A stretch of 64,000 nucleotides of DNA from positions 62,001 through 126,000 of the IMG/VR virus record IMGVR_UViG_3300032046_000001, one strand, 5' to 3'. Positions 12,220-63,075 of the stretch are shown in pieces. The notes below the pieces were generated by a model that was not told the origin of the DNA, made no database searches, and saw only the letters and a list, made by a program, of their open reading frames with translations. The first letter of the stretch is position 1. Each line of letters begins with the position of its first letter. The translations under genes were made by a program, and so were the position numbers.

Positions 12220-12294
12220 AAAAACAAAATTTAAAATTATATTAAACGAGTGTTGAAAATAGAACTAAATTCTATCATCAACACTCGTTTAGTA

Positions 12295-12528
12295 TTATTG
12301 ATAAATACTATCCCAAAATCTGGTTTTGATATCATGAAGATCTTCCCTCAAATTCAGAATTATCTCTTCGCGTTTTTTGATCTCTTTTTCAAGAGTCTGA
12401 CAATACTCGCTATTGTAAATAAGATAATTAAAAAACTTCCTACATCGTTCCCAACAAAATCTAAATCCCCAAAGTGACATGATGATAAAAATTATTATAG
12501 CTCCTAAAGCTATCCAGATATTTTCCAT
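12295..12528 (-). CDS. Membrane-anchored coiled-coil protein
   Basis: SD AGGAG before ATG at 12528; N-terminal TM. Confidence 0.55.
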   Translation of the reverse strand: MENIWIALGAIIIFIIMSLWGFRFCWERCRKFFNYLIYNSEYCQTLEKEIKKREEIILNLREDLHDIKTRFWDSIYQ

Positions 12529-23713: not shown

Positions 23714-24358
23714 ATGAGTAAAAAAAATATTGAAGTTAAATTTTATATTCCAATTTCAGAAGGAAGATATTTTAATATAATATCAAACTTATCTAAAACA
23801 CTTTTAGGAAATGGAAATACTTCTGTAATTCAAGCAAGAACGGACAAACTAGTTTTTAAAGTAAAATATAATGAAAAATTATTTAGATTTGATTTTGGAC
23901 AAAAATATCTAGTTAATATTAATGAGCAAAAGATAGCATCAGAAACCATAAATATTCCTAAAATATTATTTGTTGATAATATTAAAAAATATAAAATAAG
24001 TGAATGGATTGATGGTGTTGATATTAATAAAGTATGGAATCTACCAGAAGTTTTTATTCAATCTGGAGAATTAATGGGAAAATTAAATTTAATTAAAAAT
24101 ACAAATTCTGGAATGTATTTATCTAACTGTGAATTTTCATCATCTAATGCTATTTGGAGTAATGATAAAAAAGTTTATTTAATTGACTTGGGAAAATTAC
24201 GTTGGAGTTCTTGTACTGATATAACTATCGTTCAAGTATTATTAAAAAGAATTAGAAATAAAGAAAAAATAGATCTGTTTTTAGAAGGATACTCAAAATT
24301 TAAATCGACAGAAAAAATTATAAAAATATGTAATCAAAAAAATTGGAGTTGGAAATAA
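23714..24358 (+). CDS. Kinase-like protein (APH / LPS-kinase fold)
   Basis: VFKV, ISEWIDG, N..VYLIDLG. Confidence 0.55.
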   Translation: MSKKNIEVKFYIPISEGRYFNIISNLSKTLLGNGNTSVIQARTDKLVFKVKYNEKLFRFDFGQKYLVNINEQKIASETINIPKILFVDNIKKYKISEWIDGVDINKVWNLPEVFIQSGELMGKLNLIKNTNSGMYLSNCEFSSSNAIWSNDKKVYLIDLGKLRWSSCTDITIVQVLLKRIRNKEKIDLFLEGYSKFKSTEKIIKICNQKNWSWK

Positions 24359-24383
24359 TATAGAATAGTTTTGGAGATATTAA

Positions 24384-25034
24384 ATGATAGATAAATCTAA
24401 AATAACGAAAACAATAAAACGTTTAGGTCCGTGGTATCAAAACGTAAATATATATGGTATTCAGACAGTTGGAAAAAAAGAACCTTATAGTAGTGTTGTT
24501 TCAGTACAAACTGTTTTCAATAATATTAAATCTTTTATTCCAACATCATTAAATGGATTAAGAGTTCTTGATCTTGGTTGTAATGCTGGTTTTCATTCTC
24601 TTAATATGGCATTATTAGGTGCAGAAGTTATTGGTATAGAATCTAATGAAACTTTTTATAATCAAGCTCTATTTTTAAAACAATATTATGATGAATTATA
24701 TAAACAAAATTTAAATGTGACTTATATCAAAAAAAATATATCTGATATTAATTTTAAAGAACTAGGTAAATTTGACTATGTACTAGCCTTAGCTATAATA
24801 TATCACATTGGTAAAACTCAATACGGTAAATGTACTGAGAAAGCTTTTGAAGAACAATTTCGTATATTAAAAATGATTGACTCGAATTATTTTATTGTTG
24901 GAACTAGAAATGCCTCTACAAATAACATCGATCATTATAATACAGTTTTTAACAAACTTAATTTTAGTTATATGAAAGTTATTAACGGTGGAAAAAGAAA
25001 TTGGATTTTATATGGAGGAAATAATATTAAATAA
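24384..25034 (+). CDS. SAM methyltransferase (CmoB/DUF1698-like)
   Basis: PWYQ, VLDLGCNAG, FDYVL..AIIYH. Confidence 0.75.
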   Translation: MIDKSKITKTIKRLGPWYQNVNIYGIQTVGKKEPYSSVVSVQTVFNNIKSFIPTSLNGLRVLDLGCNAGFHSLNMALLGAEVIGIESNETFYNQALFLKQYYDELYKQNLNVTYIKKNISDINFKELGKFDYVLALAIIYHIGKTQYGKCTEKAFEEQFRILKMIDSNYFIVGTRNASTNNIDHYNTVFNKLNFSYMKVINGGKRNWILYGGNNIK

Positions 25035-25059
25035 AAGAAAAACTTTATACTTTAATAGT

Positions 25060-25392
25060 TTATCTTCCAACCCCCCTTCCCCTTAAGAAACCCCATCCCC
25101 TCTTCTATTATAATTTTTAATTACTTTGATTATAATAGATATTTGGGGATGGTATAATAACTGATTTTACTACTTTTCTTATTAATAATCTTTAATGCTC
25201 GTCTGAAGACTCGCTACAATATAATCTGGATATTGAGGGATTTTTCCACTGGCAATTCGACCAGCCAAAATACTCATATTATATAAAGGCACTTCGAATT
25301 GGCATTTAATGCGAATAAAGGTTAGATAGTTTTTATTAGGAAGATGAGGTCATAAACGTTCTCCACCGTTTCTAAAAACTATCTAATTTCTA
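25060..25392 (-). ncRNA. Candidate structured ncRNA (alternatively a replication origin)
   Basis: No ORF; inverted repeats 25322-35/25373-86, 25093-100/25145-52 and 25104-14/25129-39; pseudoknot 25253-60/25294-301; promoter-like motif directly upstream on the minus strand. Confidence 0.5.
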
Positions 25393-25394
25393 TT

Positions 25395-25426
25395 ATTATG
25401 TTATAGATAATAAATTTTTAATTTGA
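25395..25426 (-). promoter_or_regulatory. Bipartite promoter-like motif TCAAATT-N17-AACA
   Basis: Same boxes and spacing as the copies at 25507, 32267, 53084 and 58317. Confidence 0.55.
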
Positions 25427-25506
25427 TATCAAATTAGATTTTTAAATTATCTACTATTATTATGTTATTGTCACTTTTCAAATCATTTATAAAAATGAAT
25501 TTATAG

Positions 25507-25537
25507 TCAAATTCAAAATTATAATTATATAACATAT
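25507..25537 (+). promoter_or_regulatory. Bipartite promoter-like motif TCAAATT-N17-AACA
   Basis: Heads the + strand operon starting at 25559. Confidence 0.6.
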
Positions 25538-25558
25538 TTAAAAAGGAGATTAAATTGG

Positions 25559-26200
25559 ATGAAAATATTAACTATATGTCAAGGTGGTAATAGTCGAAGT
25601 GTGGGAATGGCGTTTCTTCTTAAATATAAATATAATATAGACGCGATTGCTTGTAGTTGGGAAAAGAATAGCTCTGAAACTTTGAAGATGTTATTTGAAT
25701 GGGCTGATAACATTCTCATTATGGAAAGTAATTTTGAAAAATATATTCCAAATGAGTATAAACATAAGATTAGAGTGACCGATGTTGGAGAAGATGTTTG
25801 GTTCTCTATTAGAAAAGACTTGGTTGATTTATGTGATCAATTATTAGAACCTTTTAAAATGGGGGTAAATATGATTAATGAGTCCGAATACAGAAATGAA
25901 ATAAAAAATATAGTATTTGAAATTAAAGAATCTCCTATTAATGGATTGGGAGTTTTTTCATTAAAAAATTTTAAAAAAGATGATTATATTTCTATACACG
26001 GAATTATGTTGGAAAATGATTTTGAAATCACCAAATTTGGTAGATATTTAAATCATTCATACACACCAAATGCTGTGACAAAAGTTAATCTTGGTGTTTA
26101 TAAAACCTATGCTATAAAACCAATTAAATCAGGAGATGAAATAACTCTTGATTATAGAAAAAGAAAAGAACTGGAGCAACCACAAAAAGGATGGAAATAA
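25559..26200 (+). CDS. LMW-PTP-like phosphatase fused to a SET-domain protein
   Basis: CQGGNSRS (Cx5RS); GLGVF, RYLNHS..PN and GDEITLDY SET motifs; internal SD plus ATG at 25871. Confidence 0.75.
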   Translation: MKILTICQGGNSRSVGMAFLLKYKYNIDAIACSWEKNSSETLKMLFEWADNILIMESNFEKYIPNEYKHKIRVTDVGEDVWFSIRKDLVDLCDQLLEPFKMGVNMINESEYRNEIKNIVFEIKESPINGLGVFSLKNFKKDDYISIHGIMLENDFEITKFGRYLNHSYTPNAVTKVNLGVYKTYAIKPIKSGDEITLDYRKRKELEQPQKGWK

Positions 26201-26203
26201 AAT

Positions 26204-26428
26204 ATGATTGGTGAATTGTTTAATAAATTATTTGGTAAAAATCAGATTGAAGAAGAGTTAAAAAAAGAAGCTGCCGCTGATAGAAAAACAATAGAAGGTG
26301 TTAAAAAAACAATCCATATTATAGAAGAATATAAAAAACTTGGTTTTGATATGTCTGGATGTTGGTATACATGTCCAGTAAAATTATATGATAAAGTAAT
26401 GGAGGAAATAAATAGTGAAACTGTTTGA
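26204..26428 (+). CDS. Hypothetical protein
   Basis: N-terminus resembles that of 26415 (ELKKEA). Confidence 0.55.
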   Translation: MIGELFNKLFGKNQIEEELKKEAAADRKTIEGVKKTIHIIEEYKKLGFDMSGCWYTCPVKLYDKVMEEINSETV

Positions 26429-27822: not shown

Positions 27823-28223
27823 GTACTACATTAAAATTATCAAATAAAGAAATTATAGATTTAAATTTGATGTGTAAAATGATGTCATTTACAATAGGAA
27901 GTTGTTACTCAACATCGAATAACTGTGTGCCATCTCTTTATACATCATTTAATTCAAATGATATAAATAATATAAAAGATTTTAATAATAAATTAATGAA
28001 TAAAATAATAGAAGAAGAATCTGATAATTTAGAAGTTCCAAAAATAGAAAAAACTTTTATAGAAGAATTAAGATATTTGATCAATCAATACAGTAAAGAA
28101 AACGGTTCAGATACTCCAGATTTTATATTATCTGAATATTTAAATGAATGTCTTGAATTATTCAATAAAATAATAAATAAAAGAGAAGATTGGTATGGAC
28201 AGAAATTAAATGAAAATTTATGA
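27819..28223 (+). CDS. Hypothetical protein
   Basis: C-terminal SKENGSDTPDFIL-type phage ORFan domain. Confidence 0.6.
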   Translation: MSTTLKLSNKEIIDLNLMCKMMSFTIGSCYSTSNNCVPSLYTSFNSNDINNIKDFNNKLMNKIIEEESDNLEVPKIEKTFIEELRYLINQYSKENGSDTPDFILSEYLNECLELFNKIINKREDWYGQKLNENL

Positions 28224-28839
28224 AAATTTAGATATTAATGATTTAGATGGAGAAGTTTGGAAAACAATAGAAGGATATCCTGATTACCAAGTTAGTAATC
28301 TTGGTAGAGTTAAAAGAATTATTGTAGATAGATGGAATCATAAATTAAAAATATTAAAACAAAATAAAAATAATAATAAATATTTTAAAGTTAGTTTATC
28401 TAAAAATGGAATATCAAAAACTAAATTGGTTCATCGTCTTGTTTTTGAAACCTTTAAAGAAAGATTAAAAGATGGGCATGATGCTCATCACATAAATGAA
28501 GATAAAGAATATAATTTTATTAATAATTTAGAATCTAAACCACACGGAAAACATATAGAAGACCATAGAAAAGGAAAGAAACTTTCAGAAGAAACTAAAA
28601 ATAGAATTAGTGAAAGTAGTGAAGGAAAAATATTATCTGAAGAAACAAAAAAGAAAATGAGTGAAAGTAAAAAAGGAGAAAATCATCCAAATTTTAAAAT
28701 AACAAATCCAAAAATCATTGGTATTCAAATAGATATAGAAAATAGAAATTTGACACAAAAAGAAATTGGTAGAAAAAACAGAATTTCCCAGTCAATGATA
28801 TCTAAAATAAAAACAGGAAAAATTAGGTATCATATATGA
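28210..28839 (+). CDS. NUMOD4-HNH homing endonuclease with NUMOD3 and HTH
   Basis: NUMOD4, AHHINEDKEYN, SEETKKKMSE. Confidence 0.85.
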   Translation: MKIYENLDINDLDGEVWKTIEGYPDYQVSNLGRVKRIIVDRWNHKLKILKQNKNNNKYFKVSLSKNGISKTKLVHRLVFETFKERLKDGHDAHHINEDKEYNFINNLESKPHGKHIEDHRKGKKLSEETKNRISESSEGKILSEETKKKMSESKKGENHPNFKITNPKIIGIQIDIENRNLTQKEIGRKNRISQSMISKIKTGKIRYHI

Positions 28840-31980: not shown

Positions 31981-32238
31981 ATGTATAAAATAATTGAGAC
32001 AGACAAAGAAGCTAAATGGGGAAGTGGTCATCTTACTACAACTGTAGTTCCAGTAGCCACTATGGAAAATCAATATGGGCATAAAGTACAGATAGTCCAT
32101 CACGATAACGCATACTTGATTTTGTTAGAACAGAAAGATGGAACATATAAACATACAGCGTGGATATTCCCAGAAGTATTTGATATTTTAAAAACATTAC
32201 CTAACCCTTTAACACACAAGCCAGAGATGATGATTTAG
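31981..32238 (+). CDS. Hypothetical protein, paralog of 31663
   Basis: SD GGAGG; shared blocks as above. Confidence 0.65.
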   Translation: MYKIIETDKEAKWGSGHLTTTVVPVATMENQYGHKVQIVHHDNAYLILLEQKDGTYKHTAWIFPEVFDILKTLPNPLTHKPEMMI

Positions 32239-32252
32239 TCATCTCTGGTTTA
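32221..32252 (+). terminator. Rho-independent terminator
   Basis: CCAGAGATGA/TCATCTCTGG stem followed by TTT. Confidence 0.65.
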
Positions 32253-32266
32253 TTCTCATTTTAAGG

Positions 32267-32297
32267 TCAAATTAAAAATATTATGATATTAACATAT
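32267..32297 (+). promoter_or_regulatory. Bipartite promoter-like motif TCAAATT-N17-AACA
   Basis: Immediately after a terminator, heading the next operon. Confidence 0.6.
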
Positions 32298-32334
32298 AAA
32301 TGAATTTTTAAATTAAATTTTTTTGGAGGATATA

Positions 32335-52765: not shown

Positions 52766-53056
52766 TTAAATATTTAAATACACAAAGCTATCACTTGTTT
52801 TGAGTATCAACAGATCACCATGTTTTAATTTCGGAAGACTTCCAGTTATTTCAACATCAACTACAGTTGTAAATACATCAGTATTGATTAATTCTTTAGA
52901 AACAGGTTGATCTTTTACTATAACTATTATTTCCTGTTCTTTCCTGGCCTGTACAAGAGGATTGATGTTATATGTACTCATACCACGTATATCTTTTATA
53001 TTTCCATGATTTATCATGTGATCATAAATCTCTCCATTATCTGTCAAATATATCAT
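52766..53056 (-). CDS. Hypothetical protein, weak paralog of 53117
   Basis: PKLKHGDLLIL vs PKFEKHDQIIIL. Confidence 0.55.
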   Translation of the reverse strand: MIYLTDNGEIYDHMINHGNIKDIRGMSTYNINPLVQARKEQEIIVIVKDQPVSKELINTDVFTTVVDVEITGSLPKLKHGDLLILKTSDSFVYLNI

Positions 53057-53083
53057 TATTGCACCTCTATTTTGAATTTGACA

Positions 53084-53115
53084 TCAAATTAAAATTTATT
53101 TATCTCTAACATAAT
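53084..53115 (+). promoter_or_regulatory. Bipartite promoter-like motif TCAAATT-N17-AACA within a minus-strand operon
   Basis: Nearly identical over 32 nt to the 25426 (-) copy; part of palindrome AATTTGACATCAAATT. Confidence 0.5.
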
Positions 53116-53116
53116 A

Positions 53117-53446
53117 TTAGAAATTTTCGATGAGTGTTATAAGTATGTGAGCAATGTTACCTAATATAATAATTTGATCATGCTTCTCAAATTTTGGAAA
53201 TCCCAATCTTCCAATATCACACACTTCGAATGTTGTTTGGTAATGCTCAACAGTATCGGTCTCGGTACACGCGTGTGATATGAATACAACGGGAAATTCA
53301 CCAGACTCAAGATTGACTGTTTTTAGTACTTCCTGAATTTCTTTTTCAGAGATTTCTTGAACATGGAAAATTTCAAAATGTGATAATATGGCGAATATAA
53401 TCGTTGTTACATCCCAACTCATTTGTGGTGGACAAAAATATACCAT
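53117..53446 (-). CDS. Hypothetical protein
   Basis: SD AAGGAG. Confidence 0.6.
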   Translation of the reverse strand: MVYFCPPQMSWDVTTIIFAILSHFEIFHVQEISEKEIQEVLKTVNLESGEFPVVFISHACTETDTVEHYQTTFEVCDIGRLGFPKFEKHDQIIILGNIAHILITLIENF

Positions 53447-59841: not shown

Positions 59842-62800
59842 TTGTTCAGTATTAAAAATTCAAAATTCAGTGATTGTTTTTCTTGTAAATTATTAGGTGC
59901 GCCTTCTTGTATTCTTGAGACGAACTGTAAAGATGATTTATCAAAAATTGACATAATCATAGTTGCTGAAAATCCAGGAAAAAATGAAGTTGAAGCTGGT
60001 ATACCATTAATTGGAAGATCTGGTAAAACTTTCAGAAAATATTTTGACAAGTATTTGAGAAATCTAAATTATTTAATTACGAATGTTGTGTTGTGTCAAA
60101 CTATTGATGCTGAAGGAAATACGAGTAATCCCGATGATGAGACAATTGAAAGATGTAAAAATAATCTTGTAGCACTAATAGATATCTGTAAACCTAAATT
60201 AATTTTTTGTATGGGGGCATCACCAGCAGCAGCATTCGATATTAAGAAAGTGAAAATGACTGATGTACGTGGTGAAATTATAAAATGGAATGGTTATGAT
60301 GTATTATTAACAATACATCCTTCATATGTGAATAGAAATAAAAAAACCAATCCAGAATTTGAAATGAATTTTGAAAGTGATTTTGTGAAAGCCGCGAATT
60401 TATTAGGTATTAGTGTCAAACAGAACAATGTTGAAGAAAGTTTTGTGTCAACATCAAAGGGCATACAATCATATATGATTCCTGAAAAATATTATACTGA
60501 TGAATACAGATTAATTGATATTCATTATTCATCTTTAAAAAATCAAGTGATTTATATTTTCAGAGATAAGAATGAAGTGAAATCATACTATATTGTTGAT
60601 GATCAATATTATTGTTATCAAACACCAACAAAAATTGATAATAGACCAGTTGTTGAATATGATAATTTAAATCGATTATCAATAAAATATGCCGACAGAA
60701 AAAGATTAGATTCTAAAATCACATATGAGGGTGATATTAAAATTTATGATAAACACATCATTGATTATTTTATTCACAATAAGGGTGAAGCGATTGACAC
60801 AAATTTAAATATTTACTATGTTGATATCGAAGTCGATCCTGGTGAATCAAAAGGTGTATCAAATGCCGATGAAGCTGAGTTTCCAATTAATTTAATTACT
60901 GTCAGATATAACGGACAAACTATAACGTATGTTTTGGATAATGGAACAAAAATTAACAAAATAAAAGATGTTGAACTTAAAATATTCAAAACTGAGAAAT
61001 CACTAATGATAACATTCTTGGATGATTTAGATAAATTCAATCCCGATATAATCACTGGATGGAATGTTATTAGTTTTGATATGTGTTATATTTTCAATAG
61101 ATTGCCAAAACTAAATATTAATAAAATGAGAATATCACCTTTCAAAGATGCGTATATCGATAAAGAAAGAGGATATGCGAATGTTCCTGGTTATGTTCTG
61201 ATAGATATGTGTTCATTGTACAAAGAGTTCCAATTGAAAGCCAGAGAAAATTATAAACTTGGTACAATCGCACAGGTCGAAGTTGGTGAAACAAAAATTC
61301 AACTCGAAGGTTCATTTTCAGATATGTATCGAAATAATATTAATAAATTTATCGAATATAATATTCGAGATACAATGCTCCTAGAGAAACTTGAAAATAA
61401 ATTAAAGTTCATTAAGTTATTGAATGAATTAAGAAGAATTTGTTCTGGATCTTTCAAAACATGTGAAAATACATCAGGACGTTTGGACTGTTTAGTAACA
61501 AGACATTTGAAATGTAAAAATTTCGCTTCCAGAAATTCACAAGGTCTTTCTAAAGAAAAATTTCCAGGAGCGTATGTCCAAGAACCAATGATGGGAATTC
61601 ATAATTATGTAGTTGATTTTGATTATAAATCTCTATATCCGAGTTTAGTATTGACCTACAATATTGGTATTAATACATTCTTGATGAAGTTTGAGAATTT
61701 AAGATTCGGTTATGACTTGGCGTATGACATTGATAATTTACCCGAAAAGTTCATTATTGTTAAAGATCCATTATTTAAGAATGAACGAATTGAATATACA
61801 AAAGAACAACTTTTAAATGAAATAAAAGATCAAAATCTTATTTGTACAATTAATGGTTGTTTTTATAAAAATCATAAGACCGAGCTATCATATTATAGTG
61901 AAATTCTTGAACATCTTCTGAGTTCACGAGATGTCTCCAAGAGAAAGATGTTAGAACTAAAAGAGGCGAAAGAATTTGATATGGTTGAGTTATATGATAT
62001 TCGACAGAAAACATATAAAGTTTTAGCCAATGCTCTTTATGGTATTTTAGGAACTAATATTTATAGATTCTTTAATCTTGATATGGCATCTTCGATTACA
62101 CTATCAGGACAAGAAGTTATTAAAAATTCAATTTTACATGTTGATAAGTATATGGATAATTTAAAGAGAGGAATTAAAGAAGATGTTGATATCACAATAT
62201 CAAAAGAAAATGTCTACACTGATTGGATGGATGTGAAATTGAAATATATCATTACAAGCGATACCGATTCGATATTAGCGACATTATCAAAATTTATAAA
62301 AAGTAAAGATTATGAAACATCAATTCAAGAAATGACAGATATCTGTTCGAGTATTCAAAATTTTATAAACAATCAAGTTGTTTCAAGAATAATAAATAGA
62401 CATAATGTTCCAATTGATAAAAATCGATTAAAAATTAAAAATGAATTGATGTGTTCGAGAGGTTTATTTGTTAGCAAGAAACACTACGCACTCTATGTAA
62501 TATTTCAAGAGAATAAACGTGTTGATGAAATGACAATTACTGGATTAGAAATAAAACGTCGTGATTTTTCATCATATACAAAAGATTGTATGAAAGAACT
62601 TCTTGATATTATTTTAAAATCTGAAAAAATATCATTTAATCAAATTATGTCATATGTCAAGGAGAAAGAATATGAATTCATTAAAAGAATTCGATGTGGT
62701 GATAAAACTGTTGCAAGACCAAGTGGTTGGAAGAAAAAATTAGATGAATATAAAGTTATTCCTCAAGGAATTTACGCAATGATGAACTGGAACGATTTAT

Positions 62801-63075
62801 TATATAATTCATTCGAATGTGGTGTTCGTGGATATTTATTTAAAATTAATGGCATAGATATTTCAAAGACACCAAAGAATGTTATTGAGAATTATAATAA
62901 AATATTTGTATCTGGTGGTAAAACTTTAGAAACCATATGTGTACCGGATGAAGAATCCAGACTTCCTGAATATTTTATCCCAGATATGAAAGAGATGTTA
63001 AAGTTTCACTGGATTGATCGTTACAGTCAGTTATTAGCACCAATTATTAAACCAGTTGAATTAGTAAAAATTTAA
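59842..63075 (+). CDS. Family-4 uracil-DNA glycosylase fused to a family-B DNA polymerase
   Basis: UDG4: CxxC, AENPG..E, G.SG, TNVVLC, HPS. PolB: DIE, GWN..FD, YNIRD, DYKSLYPS, K...NALYG, SDTDS, KKHY. Confidence 0.9.
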   Translation: MFSIKNSKFSDCFSCKLLGAPSCILETNCKDDLSKIDIIIVAENPGKNEVEAGIPLIGRSGKTFRKYFDKYLRNLNYLITNVVLCQTIDAEGNTSNPDDETIERCKNNLVALIDICKPKLIFCMGASPAAAFDIKKVKMTDVRGEIIKWNGYDVLLTIHPSYVNRNKKTNPEFEMNFESDFVKAANLLGISVKQNNVEESFVSTSKGIQSYMIPEKYYTDEYRLIDIHYSSLKNQVIYIFRDKNEVKSYYIVDDQYYCYQTPTKIDNRPVVEYDNLNRLSIKYADRKRLDSKITYEGDIKIYDKHIIDYFIHNKGEAIDTNLNIYYVDIEVDPGESKGVSNADEAEFPINLITVRYNGQTITYVLDNGTKINKIKDVELKIFKTEKSLMITFLDDLDKFNPDIITGWNVISFDMCYIFNRLPKLNINKMRISPFKDAYIDKERGYANVPGYVLIDMCSLYKEFQLKARENYKLGTIAQVEVGETKIQLEGSFSDMYRNNINKFIEYNIRDTMLLEKLENKLKFIKLLNELRRICSGSFKTCENTSGRLDCLVTRHLKCKNFASRNSQGLSKEKFPGAYVQEPMMGIHNYVVDFDYKSLYPSLVLTYNIGINTFLMKFENLRFGYDLAYDIDNLPEKFIIVKDPLFKNERIEYTKEQLLNEIKDQNLICTINGCFYKNHKTELSYYSEILEHLLSSRDVSKRKMLELKEAKEFDMVELYDIRQKTYKVLANALYGILGTNIYRFFNLDMASSITLSGQEVIKNSILHVDKYMDNLKRGIKEDVDITISKENVYTDWMDVKLKYIITSDTDSILATLSKFIKSKDYETSIQEMTDICSSIQNFINNQVVSRIINRHNVPIDKNRLKIKNELMCSRGLFVSKKHYALYVIFQENKRVDEMTITGLEIKRRDFSSYTKDCMKELLDIILKSEKISFNQIMSYVKEKEYEFIKRIRCGDKTVARPSGWKKKLDEYKVIPQGIYAMMNWNDLLYNSFECGVRGYLFKINGIDISKTPKNVIENYNKIFVSGGKTLETICVPDEESRLPEYFIPDMKEMLKFHWIDRYSQLLAPIIKPVELVKI

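What the first reader, a model, noticed from the sequence alone, without database searches (positions are those of the whole stretch)
25060..25430. ORF-free, heavily structured ~330-nt region with its own promoter-like motif: candidate novel ncRNA or origin
Seen: a ~520-nt intergenic gap with a 14-bp stem (25322-35/25373-86), a long interrupted stem (CCATCCCC/GGGGATGG plus TCTATTATAAT/ATTATAATAGA), a hairpin CTGG-CAATTCGA-CCAG whose loop is complementary to TCGAATTG (25294-301, a pseudoknot), small hairpins (GTCTGAAGAC, GCATTTAATGC) and C-runs unusual for this AT-rich DNA. A TCAAATT-N17-AACA motif on the minus strand (25426-25395) points into it and would start transcription right at the first stem. 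I see no tRNA, tmRNA or RNase P signature. Inference: a phage ncRNA, or a primer RNA at a replication origin.
Basis: partly seen in the sequence, partly recalled or inferred. Interest (0 to 1): 0.7.

Follow-up and report, generated by a model that had tools for sequence, protein, structure and literature searches.

The report
Conserved structured non-coding spacer in jumbo phage
A 524-base gene-free spacer in a 312-kb phage genome holds a folded, evolutionarily conserved core next to the phage's own promoter signals, so it is probably a small regulatory RNA gene of a kind not yet catalogued, though which strand is read, and whether it is read at all, remains unproven.

Summary
The gap 25035-25558 has no credible ORF under any code, no tRNA and no Rfam match. 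It folds better than shuffles (z about -4 on both strands). It also holds the most C-rich stretch and the only G-quadruplex motif of the 312-kb genome.

Two other phage lineages (L012/L013/L021 and L062) carry a homologous spacer at the same place; at least four related lineages lack it entirely. What is conserved is a roughly 170-nt core, 25220-25390. It has two invariant boxes and two helices, H1 and H2, whose stem sequences differ between lineages while pairing and loop lengths are kept. The left third (C-tract, long stem) is specific to this lineage, and the small hairpins are not conserved.

It is the best non-training match in the genome and points into the core. The same class (P2, plus strand) drives the downstream gene.

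The strand stays unresolved: G-U asymmetry is contradictory, and H2 also looks like a plus-strand terminator. The only trace in an RNA library is a single, probably duplicated fragment. There is no support for an origin.

Verdict: a candidate new phage ncRNA inside a terminator/promoter cassette. Moderately interesting and not proven.

The parts
25035..25558 (.). The whole 524-nt gene-free spacer. It lies between a SAM-methyltransferase gene and a fused gene encoding a low-molecular-weight phosphatase-like domain and a SET domain.
   Evidence: ORF list and six-frame translation; Pfam for the flanking genes. No decayed copy of the neighbouring 212-230-aa gene was found by tblastn.
25063..25105 (+). 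C-rich tract. On the minus strand, 25071-25100 reads GGGG-AT-GGGG-N8-GGGG-AA-GGGGGG, a G-quadruplex motif. It is specific to this lineage. It may be a rut-like site, a scar of lost terminator arms, or a G4.
   Evidence: Most C-rich 30-mer in 312 kb and the only G4 motif in the genome. Absent from L012 and L062.
25093..25152 (.). Long interrupted hairpin: 8 bp rich in G-C, an 11-bp A-T stem and a 14-nt loop. On the minus strand it is followed by GGTTTCTT (25092-25085), which makes it a possible minus-strand terminator. Specific to this lineage.
   Evidence: The relatives instead carry a classic GGGGC-TTC-GCCCC-TTT terminator here. In the near-identical variant from run X7 the stem arms are unchanged and the substitutions fall in the loop.
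25220..25238 (.). Conserved box A, TATAATCT-(0-3 nt)-ATATTGAGG. It marks the left edge of the conserved core. It contains a TATAAT that could be a plus-strand -10 element, and its UGAG can pair with CUCA in box C.
   Evidence: Invariant in window, L012 type and L062. The spacer between the two sub-boxes varies in length.
25251..25303 (.). Helix H1, GGCAATTCGA 25251-60 with TCGAATTGGC 25294-303, enclosing a 33-nt loop that holds box C.
   Evidence: The same position, and a loop of 32-33 nt, in all three lineages, with different stem sequences: GGCAAAAAATT/AATCTTTTGCC in L012 and GGAATTGG/CCAACTCC in L062. Duplex-versus-shuffle p is about 0.005-0.33 per lineage, combined by hand to about 0.007.
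25271..25279 (.). Conserved box C, TACTCATAT, in the loop of H1.
   Evidence: Invariant in all three lineages. Read in three different frames on the minus strand, so it is not a conserved peptide (reading).
25319..25389 (.). Helix H2. The core is 14 bp (25322-35/25373-86), extended to 17 bp by two G-U pairs on the plus strand, with a structured 37-nt loop. It could be the 5' hairpin of a minus-strand RNA, the terminator of a plus-strand RNA, or both.
   Evidence: Two compensatory pairs against the L012 type, and 98.5% of cells paired compared with 43-51% when partners are slid. L062 has a wholly different 14-bp stem with a 38-nt loop. Found by model R1 in L062.
25395..25426 (-). Promoter-like motif of the phage's own class: TCAAATT 25426-25420, then 17 nt, then (T)AACAT 25403-25398. 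The predicted start is near 25391, pointing into H2.
   Evidence: The motif occurs 8 times against 1.2 expected, and 4 copies lie directly upstream of genes. A PWM trained only on gene-proximal sites ranks this site first among all non-training positions, at 24.8 bits against 16 or less for background. It is conserved in the L012 type and degenerate in L062.
25420..25435 (.). Perfect 16-bp palindrome AATTTGATATCAAATT. It carries the TCAAATT box on both strands. It belongs to a roughly 70-nt module that recurs at window 53052-53124 (minus strand).
   Evidence: nhmmer finds only these two strong copies in the genome.
25390..25468 (+). Two direct repeats, CTATTATTATGTTAT at 25390-25404 and 25454-25468, 64 bp apart and flanking the palindrome. 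Each is the reverse complement of an ATAACATAAT -10-like element.
   Evidence: Both copies have changed in parallel in L012 and L062.
25507..25536 (+). Promoter-like motif P2 of the same class (TCAAATT-N17-AACATA). It is followed by the Shine-Dalgarno sequence AGGAGA at 25544-49 and the ATG at 25559.
   Evidence: top score, 45.7 bits. Conserved in the L012 type and L062.

Best explanation
The spacer is a lineage-restricted regulatory cassette in a distantly T4-like jumbo phage. It was inserted between two plus-strand genes that are adjacent in several relatives.

Its right 170 nt hold two divergent promoters of one phage-specific class (TCAAATT-N17-AACA). P2 drives the downstream phosphatase-like/SET gene. 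The other promoter fires on the minus strand from about 25391 into a gene-free stretch.

The product would be a structured non-coding RNA with a conserved 5' core, 25390 down to 25220. In order, the core holds hairpin H2 at the very 5' end, helix H1 with the invariant box C in its loop, and the invariant box A, which can pair with box C.

The 3' part differs between lineages. In this phage it is the long hairpin followed by GGUUUCUU, inside the G-rich tract.

Shown: the region is non-coding; the core and both helices are conserved; the promoter motif belongs to its class and points into the core. Inferred: that the promoter fires, where the RNA ends, and what it does.

My best guess at function is a regulatory RNA that runs convergently towards the 3' end of the upstream sugar-modification operon and helps separate the two transcription units. 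H2 may double as a stop for plus-strand read-through.
For: The region is non-coding and matches no known RNA family.

Homologous spacers exist in the L012/L013/L021 lineage and in L062. The 3' half is about 80% identical, while the flanking methyltransferase is only 78% identical at the protein level.

Boxes A and C are invariant. H1 and H2 keep their pairing and their loop lengths (33/32/32 nt and 37/36/38 nt) although the stem sequences differ. Model R1, trained without L062, finds L062 at 40 bits with E about 7e-6.

The promoter class is enriched (8 sites against 1.2 expected) and sits upstream of genes. The minus-strand site is the best non-training match in the genome and is conserved in the L012 type.

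In H1, the L012 and L062 lineages have G-U pairs on the minus strand where the plus strand would have A-C mismatches.

An RNA-Seq library holds only 25013-25166 and 25210-25362 of the 2-kb stretch laid.
Against: The strand is not settled.
- H2 has G-U pairs on the plus strand in the window and in L062; these would be A-C mismatches on the minus strand.
- Folding energies are about equal on the two strands.
- H2 followed by TTTCTATT looks like a plus-strand terminator, and a similar long A-U hairpin ends a gene at 12243-12292.
- The conserved core begins exactly at a TATAAT on the plus strand.
- The L012 and L062 spacers show no good minus-strand terminator.
- The -35-like box is degenerate in L062.

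The comparative base is thin: only three diverged lineages, so the covariation statistics are weak (33 of 500 shuffles reach the observed score; H1 p about 0.007 when combined).

The RNA-library signal is two 151-nt contigs of equal depth. That is probably one duplicated fragment, possibly DNA carry-over, and it reaches 25013, beyond the proposed 3' end.
Confidence: 0.4

Rival explanations
1. The RNA is made from the plus strand. It would be either a small RNA of about 165 nt starting just after the conserved TATAAT of box A (25220-25225) and ending at H2 with its U-rich tail (25387-25400), or the structured 3' UTR of the upstream operon ending at H2. Box A (AUAUUGAGG), the C-rich tract and the CUCC in the H2 loop would be the exposed parts.
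For: Conservation starts sharply at TATAAT/GATAAT/TATAAT in all three lineages, and the sequence upstream cannot be aligned. H2 is followed by a U-rich run in all three lineages. H2 carries plus-strand G-U pairs in the window and in L062. The two stem substitutions in the X7 variant (25129 A>G, 25326 A>G) keep G-U pairing on the plus strand only. L012 and L062 have a canonical terminator before the core, so a plus-strand RNA through the core would need its own start. A comparable long A-U hairpin acts as a gene-end terminator at 12243-12292.
Against: No conserved -35 element, and no match to the phage's own promoter class, lies upstream of box A (reading). H1 has an A-C or G-G mismatch on the plus strand in every lineage. 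This model leaves the strongly conserved minus-strand promoter motif unexplained. H2 has only 2 G-C pairs and a 37-nt loop, so the terminator scan did not call it.
Confidence: 0.25
2. There is no functional RNA. The spacer would be an oversized terminator/promoter boundary, analogous to the PeSL cassettes of T4-type phages. It would hold one or two stem-loops that stop the upstream operon, promoter and operator sequences for the downstream one, and rearrangement scars such as the C-tract, which resembles orphaned pyrimidine arms of this phage's terminators.
For: The spacer is an insertion/deletion difference between close relatives: it is present in three lineages and absent in the L014 group, L061, L063 and the V4trovi0 contig. 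PeSLs are associated with exactly such differences (PMC2839356, PMC4122927). A compact stem-loop plus a promoter of the same class exists at window 32218-32300. This phage's terminators have purine-rich 5' arms and CCCTC-like 3' arms that resemble the C-tract. The left third is not conserved, and gene order differs there.
Against: It does not explain the invariant boxes A and C. It does not explain H1, which keeps its geometry while its sequence changes and lies between the first terminator and H2. It does not explain why the spacer is 524 nt when other boundaries in this genome take about 100 nt. The extended module has only two copies in the genome, unlike multi-copy PeSLs.
Confidence: 0.25
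3. The spacer is a replication origin of the R-loop/primer type, as in T4 oriF/oriG or ColE1 RNA II. The minus-strand promoter would make an RNA that stays hybridised at the G-rich tract and primes DNA synthesis. The direct repeats and the palindrome would be binding sites.
For: The promoter has no gene downstream of it. The only G-run/G4 tract of the genome lies about 300 nt downstream on the RNA-like strand. Two direct repeats flank a perfect palindrome. That G-rich transcripts favour persistent hybrids, and that T4 origins consist of a promoter plus an unwinding element, are my own knowledge and were not tested here.
Against: The G-tract is absent from the L012 and L062 spacers. The whole spacer is absent from close relatives. 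GC skew follows gene strand, with no switch here. The transcribed stretch has a higher G+C content than the genome average and is structured, so it is not an unwinding element.
Confidence: 0.07

Closest known systems
PeSL / PmSL cassettes (promoter-early or promoter-middle stem-loop) of T4-type phages (Arbiol et al. 2010, PMC2839356; Comeau et al. 2014, PMC4122927)
   Same: A stem-loop sits next to a phage promoter in an intergenic spacer. The spacer is present in some close relatives and absent in others. The host genome is distantly T4-like by its polB gene.
   Different: PeSLs are short and occur in many copies. Here the spacer is 524 nt, the extended module has two copies, and the promoter class has about six members. 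The promoter consensus is TCAAATT-N17-AACA, not a sigma-70 type. An additional conserved, folded 170-nt core lies between the stem-loops.
Lambda oop-type convergent antisense RNA (from my own knowledge)
   Same: A short non-coding transcript starts in a spacer and runs towards the 3' end of the upstream gene, with a stable hairpin.
   Different: Overlap with the methyltransferase gene is not shown. There is no sequence or Rfam similarity. At about 300 nt, the predicted RNA is much longer.
T4 oriF/oriG and ColE1 RNA II primer transcripts (from my own knowledge)
   Same: A promoter without a downstream gene, a structured transcript, and G-runs downstream.
   Different: No AT-rich unwinding element, no conservation of the G-runs, and no replication signal.
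Rfam RF01814 (rhtB sRNA), the best sub-threshold Rfam match
   Same: A long hairpin of similar size at 25307-25401.
   Different: It scores 30.7 bits against a gathering score of 55, and it also matches the opposite strand at 21.4 bits. This is a generic hairpin resemblance, not membership.

Membership tests
Any Rfam 15 family (including tRNA, tmRNA, RNase P, riboswitches, ribozymes, known phage RNAs) | Covariance-model score at or above the family's gathering threshold | tested here: not met
   No hits at gathering thresholds in the 64-kb window. Only hairpin-level hits at E of 0.002 or more in the spacer. Nothing at E of 1 or less in L012, L021 or L062. ARAGORN found 0 genes.
PeSL cassette | A stem-loop directly adjacent to a phage promoter in an intergenic region | tested here: met
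   H2 (25319-25389) abuts the promoter-like module at 25390-25455, with P2 at 25507.
PeSL cassette | Associated with insertion/deletion differences between close relatives | tested here: met
   The spacer is present in the window, the L012 type and L062. It is absent (8-31 nt gap) in the L014 group, L061, L063 and V4trovi0.
PeSL cassette | A short composite motif repeated many times in the genome | tested here: not met
   Only two strong copies of the module in 312 kb. The spacer is 524 nt, and its structured core is unique in the genome.
Intrinsic (Rho-independent) terminator, for H2 on the plus strand | A G+C-rich stem, a short loop and an immediately following U-tract | tested here: inconclusive
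   The U-rich tail is present (TTTCTATT, 6 of 8). However, the stem has 2 G-C pairs in 14 and the loop is 37 nt, so the scan did not call it. A similar long A-U hairpin does end a gene at 12243-12292.
Phage promoter class TCAAATT-N17-AACA (defined here) | A match to a PWM built from copies that lie 20-70 nt upstream of start codons | tested here: met
   The minus-strand site at 25426 scores 24.8 bits, the highest of all non-training positions on both strands. Activity as a promoter was not tested.
Structured ncRNA (general) | Base pairs kept through compensatory changes in independent lineages | tested here: met
   H2 has 2 compensatory pairs against the L012 type and a fully different 14-bp stem in L062. 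H1 has three different stem sequences, all complementary. There are only three lineages, so the statistics are weak.
Structured ncRNA (general) | A discrete transcript | tested here: inconclusive
   One RNA-Seq library holds two 151-nt contigs over 25013-25166 and 25210-25362 and nothing on the flanking 1.65 kb. This is probably one duplicated fragment, and DNA carry-over is not excluded. The control call failed.
R-loop origin (T4 oriF/oriG type) | A promoter followed by an AT-rich DNA unwinding element, with origin activity | tested here: not met
   The stretch downstream of the promoter is structured and about 32% G+C, above the local average of about 25%. GC skew shows no switch. Origin activity cannot be tested here.
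G-quadruplex motif | Four runs of at least 3 G separated by short loops | tested here: met
   GGGGATGGGGTTTCTTAAGGGGAAGGGGGG on the minus strand at 25100-25071, unique in the genome. Actual folding cannot be tested with these tools.

The most novel reading that the evidence does not exclude
The minus-strand promoter makes a structured RNA that runs into the genome's only G-quadruplex/G-run tract about 300 nt downstream. There it forms a persistent RNA-DNA hybrid or G4 that ends transcription and primes or licenses DNA replication. That would be an R-loop origin analogous to T4 oriF/oriG, ColE1 RNA II or the mitochondrial CSBII element, here in an uncultured jumbo phage.
Probability: 0.07. Interest if true: 0.8.

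Novelty: new member of a known kind. Interest (0 to 1): 0.5.

Why it matters
Very few non-coding RNAs of jumbo phages are known, and none is catalogued for this uncultured, distantly T4-like group.

If the core is transcribed, it would be a new, small RNA family that travels with its own promoter pair as a cassette. The cassette splits one operon into two transcription units in some lineages and not in others. That offers a natural experiment on how phages rewire gene timing.

The work also defines a rare promoter-like class (TCAAATT-N17-AACA) for this phage group, which helps annotate relatives.

If the core is not transcribed, the case is still useful. It shows that an oversized terminator/promoter boundary can mimic an RNA gene.

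Tried and rejected
Ideas tested and rejected:
- **Decayed gene.** tblastn with the 212-230-aa gene that follows the methyltransferase in relatives finds its homologue at 23714-24358, not in the spacer.
- **Alternative genetic code.** All three stop codons occur in every frame.
- **Small minus-strand peptide starting at ATATGAGT.** It has no Shine-Dalgarno sequence, and box A is read in three different frames in the three lineages.
- **TATATGAG as a promoter motif.** Its enrichment upstream of genes comes from Shine-Dalgarno sequences and start codons.
- **Box-complementary targets.** A search for them in the genome gave nothing convincing.
- **Target-site duplications.** None at the cassette borders.
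- **Second copy of the core.** Model R1 hits window 12233-12366 on the minus strand at 26 bits, but this is the 3' end of a small gene plus its terminator hairpin, not a second copy.

Searches that found nothing useful:
- Phage GenBank collection by blastn: no match.
- IMG/VR by protein: only distant, high-GC relatives without the spacer.
- IMG/VR pattern scans: only chance hits.
- Metagenome scan with the phosphatase-like protein: only the contigs already known.
- Composite box A-gap-box C pattern in 596 Gb of prokaryote genomes: only chance hits, most of them a 72-nt tandem repeat in an Ekhidna MAG.

Limits of the analysis:
- Strand choice by folding energy or G-U asymmetry gave contradictory answers.
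- H1 could not be entered in the pair-count tool, because MAFFT puts its 3' arms 4 columns out of register. It was tabulated by script instead.

Full report
**Setting.** The window is bases 62001-126000 of a 312,420-bp virus record with direct terminal repeats, rated complete. It comes from a sediment metagenome. G+C is 25-30%. Its family-B DNA polymerase is only about 28% identical to those of T4-like phages, so this is an uncultured, distantly T4-like jumbo phage. Genes from 12735 to 48807 all lie on the plus strand. Those before the spacer are methyltransferases, a DegT-type aminotransferase and similar sugar-modification enzymes. The gene after it (25559-26200) fuses a low-molecular-weight phosphatase-like domain (CX5RS motif) to a SET domain.

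**The observation.** The gap is 524 nt. It folds more stably than dinucleotide shuffles on both strands (z = -4.1). The tract 25063-25105 is the most C-rich 30-mer window in the whole genome. Its complement, GGGGATGGGGTTTCTTAAGGGGAAGGGGGG, is the only G-quadruplex motif in 312 kb.

There is no credible ORF. Every frame carries TAA, TAG and TGA. The 36-aa minus-strand ORF lacks the strong AAAGGAGA-type ribosome-binding site that this phage's genes have. Rfam gives nothing at gathering thresholds and only generic hairpin hits below them. ARAGORN finds nothing.

**Relatives.** IMG/VR and the phage GenBank collection hold no close relative. The large protein collection does: methyltransferase homologues at 56-78% identity and phosphatase-like homologues at 78-90%. 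Their contigs show a clear presence/absence pattern.
- A homologous spacer of 460-505 nt lies directly upstream of the phosphatase-like gene in L012/L013/L021 (one lineage) and in L062 (a second lineage).
- In the L014-L019 group, L061, L063 and the V4trovi0 contig, the same two genes are 8-31 nt apart.
- L060 has an unrelated 145-nt gap.
- An identical copy occurs in a second sediment sample (L011).
- A variant with about 4% differences occurs in a wastewater library.

So the spacer behaves as a cassette that is either there or not. No target-site duplication marks its ends. It is not a decayed copy of the 212-230-aa gene found beside the methyltransferase in relatives. That gene's homologue sits at 23714-24358, so gene order differs on the left side.

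**What is conserved.** The right half (25322-25540) is about 80% identical to L012, although the flanking methyltransferase is only 78% identical as protein. Alignments A3 and A6 show the following, from right to left.
- The promoter-like P2 lies in front of the downstream gene.
- A module contains a 16-bp palindrome and two direct repeats.
- Hairpin H2.
- A linker.
- Helix H1, enclosing the invariant box C (TACTCATAT).
- The invariant box A (TATAATCT, 0-3 nt, ATATTGAGG).

To the left of box A the three lineages cannot be aligned. L012 and L062 have a classic terminator there (for example GGGGC-TTC-GCCCC-TTT) right after the upstream gene. The window has the C-tract and the long interrupted hairpin instead.

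The stems of H1 and H2 differ in sequence between lineages but stay complementary, and the enclosed loops keep their lengths: 33/32/32 nt for H1 and 37/36/38 nt for H2.
- On the window-plus-L012-type alignment, 98.5% of cells pair, against 43-51% when partners are slid. H2 has two compensatory pairs.
- L062's H2 stem shares little sequence with the window's, yet it forms 14 pairs.
- A covariance model trained without L062 finds L062 at 40 bits, E about 7e-6.
- For H1, the duplex between the two flanking segments beats shuffles at p about 0.005-0.02 (window), 0.05-0.1 (L012) and 0.13-0.33 (L062). I combined these by hand to about 0.007.

The 'pseudoknot' partner pairing CAATTCGA:TCGAATTG is in fact the conserved helix H1. 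A possible real pseudoknot is box A (AUA-U-UGAG) pairing with box C (CUCA-UAU) inside the H1 loop. Both boxes are invariant, so this cannot be tested by covariation.

**The promoter motif.** TCAAATT-N17-AACA occurs 8 times in the genome against 1.2 expected. Six copies are intergenic, and four of those lie 20-70 nt upstream of a start codon in the right orientation. A weight matrix trained only on gene-proximal copies (four from this genome, plus P2 of L012 and of L062) scores the minus-strand site at 25426 at 24.8 bits. That is the best non-training position on either strand. A paralogous site at window 53084 (plus strand) scores 22.3 bits, and everything else scores 16 or less. The minus-strand motif is kept in the L012 type. 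In L062 its AACAAAT part is kept but the TCAAATT box has degenerated. It would start transcription near 25391, five bases before H2, with no minus-strand gene for 12.8 kb. The plus-strand half of the palindrome lacks the AACA element, so P2 is the only plus-strand promoter of this class in the spacer.

**Which strand?** The evidence pulls both ways.

For the minus strand:
- the promoter;
- G-U pairs in H1 of L012 and L062, which would be A-C mismatches on the plus strand;
- in the window only, a hairpin-plus-GGUUUCUU terminator-like end at 25152-25085.

For the plus strand:
- G-U pairs in H2 of the window and of L062;
- two stem transitions in the wastewater variant that keep G-U pairing only on the plus strand;
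- a U-rich run after H2 in all lineages;
- conservation that begins exactly at a TATAAT;
- a similar long A-U hairpin that terminates a small gene at 12243-12292.

Folding energies are equal within 1-4 kcal/mol. I give the minus strand a slight edge because its promoter belongs to a class validated by position, whereas the plus-strand TATAAT has no conserved -35 element.

**Transcript evidence.** No RNA run was found with the 3-kb query. With the spacer as query, one wastewater RNA-Seq library appeared. Laid on 24300-26300, it holds two 151-nt contigs of identical depth at 25013-25166 and 25210-25362, and nothing on the 1.65 kb of flanking genes. This looks like one paired fragment amplified about 11-fold. 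Such a fragment had to overlap the query to be found at all. By my estimate, it would fall entirely inside the spacer by chance about one time in six, so the support is weak. It also extends past both proposed RNA ends on the left.

**Origin hypothesis.** Cumulative GC skew simply follows gene orientation and does not turn at the spacer. The spacer is dispensable in relatives. The G-tract is specific to this lineage. The stretch downstream of the promoter is structured and above average in G+C rather than an unwinding element. Nothing positively supports an origin. T4-type origins are redundant, however, so it is not excluded.

**The C-tract.** This phage's roughly 25 canonical terminators have a purine-rich 5' arm and a pyrimidine-rich 3' arm such as TCCCCTCT or TCCCTCCCATCT. 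The C-tract resembles two or three such 3' arms without partners, at the exact place where gene order was rearranged. It may be a scar. It may be a C-rich, G-poor Rho-loading site that replaces the missing hairpin terminator. Or, on the other strand, it may be a G4. I could not discriminate between these.

**Comparison with known systems.** The nearest described thing is the PeSL/PmSL cassette of T4-type phages, a stem-loop plus promoter associated with insertions and deletions between close relatives (PMC2839356, PMC4122927). This spacer shares the adjacency and the indel behaviour. It is five times longer, is not multi-copy, uses a different promoter consensus, and carries an extra conserved folded core. 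It is not a member of any Rfam family.

**Verdict.** The ncRNA reading is partly supported, and the origin reading is unsupported. Most likely this is a candidate new phage non-coding RNA embedded in a mobile terminator/promoter cassette. Strand and function remain open.

Noticed in passing
window 25559-26200: The gene after the spacer fuses a low-molecular-weight phosphatase-like domain (CQGGNSRS motif) to a SET domain in one 213-aa protein. In all relatives fetched these are two separate genes (98-109 aa and 127 aa).
   Followed up: partly
window 53052-53124 (minus strand): The only paralogue of the roughly 70-nt palindrome module of the spacer, 88% identical over 51 nt. It fills the 60-nt gap between two minus-strand genes. 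Its promoter-like motif points the other way (plus strand, 53084), antisense to the 109-aa gene 53117-53446.
   Followed up: partly
window 23714-24358 versus L012 4926-5594: The unknown 214-aa gene lies upstream of the methyltransferase in this phage but downstream of it in L012, L014, L020 and L061. This local rearrangement is next to the non-conserved left part of the spacer.
   Followed up: partly
window 12243-12292 and about 12294-12527 (minus strand): A small hydrophobic ORF (about 78 aa, good Shine-Dalgarno sequence), not in the list of ORFs of 90 aa or more, is followed by a 15-bp A-U-rich hairpin with a structured loop and a T-run. It shows that long A-U hairpins can act as terminators in this phage.
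   Followed up: partly
window 28210-28839: An HNH/NUMOD homing-endonuclease gene sits just before the UDP-GlcNAc 2-epimerase-like gene. In L012 the epimerase gene has no such neighbour, and in L014 and L061 similar endonuclease genes sit elsewhere in the cluster. These look like mobile insertions.
   Followed up: no
window 59842-63075: The family-B DNA polymerase carries an N-terminal uracil-DNA-glycosylase-superfamily domain in the same 1077-aa ORF.
   Followed up: no
window 32218-32300: A compact PeSL-like unit: a bidirectional stem-loop (AAGCCAGAGATGAT...GTCATCTCTGGTTT) followed within 15 nt by a TCAAATT-N17-AACATA promoter-like motif.
   Followed up: partly
L064-L066, L069, L070 (Ekhidna sp. 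MAG contig CBDHDT010000016.1): Long arrays of a roughly 72-nt tandem repeat with the junction ACTCATATATTGAG. The box A/box C pattern picked them up by chance, and they are unrelated to the spacer.
   Followed up: no
L060 (GCA_043814945.1, JBDRJL010000082.1): A related gene cluster lies on a 21.6-kb contig binned as a Patescibacteria MAG, next to TrwB/T4SS-like genes. This is either a hint to the host or a binning artefact.
   Followed up: no
window 24979-24995 versus 25359-25375: The end of the methyltransferase ORF (AACGGTGGAAAA) is complementary to the conserved H2 loop (TTCTCCACCGTT). It is not conserved in L012, where the upstream gene differs, so it is probably chance.
   Followed up: no
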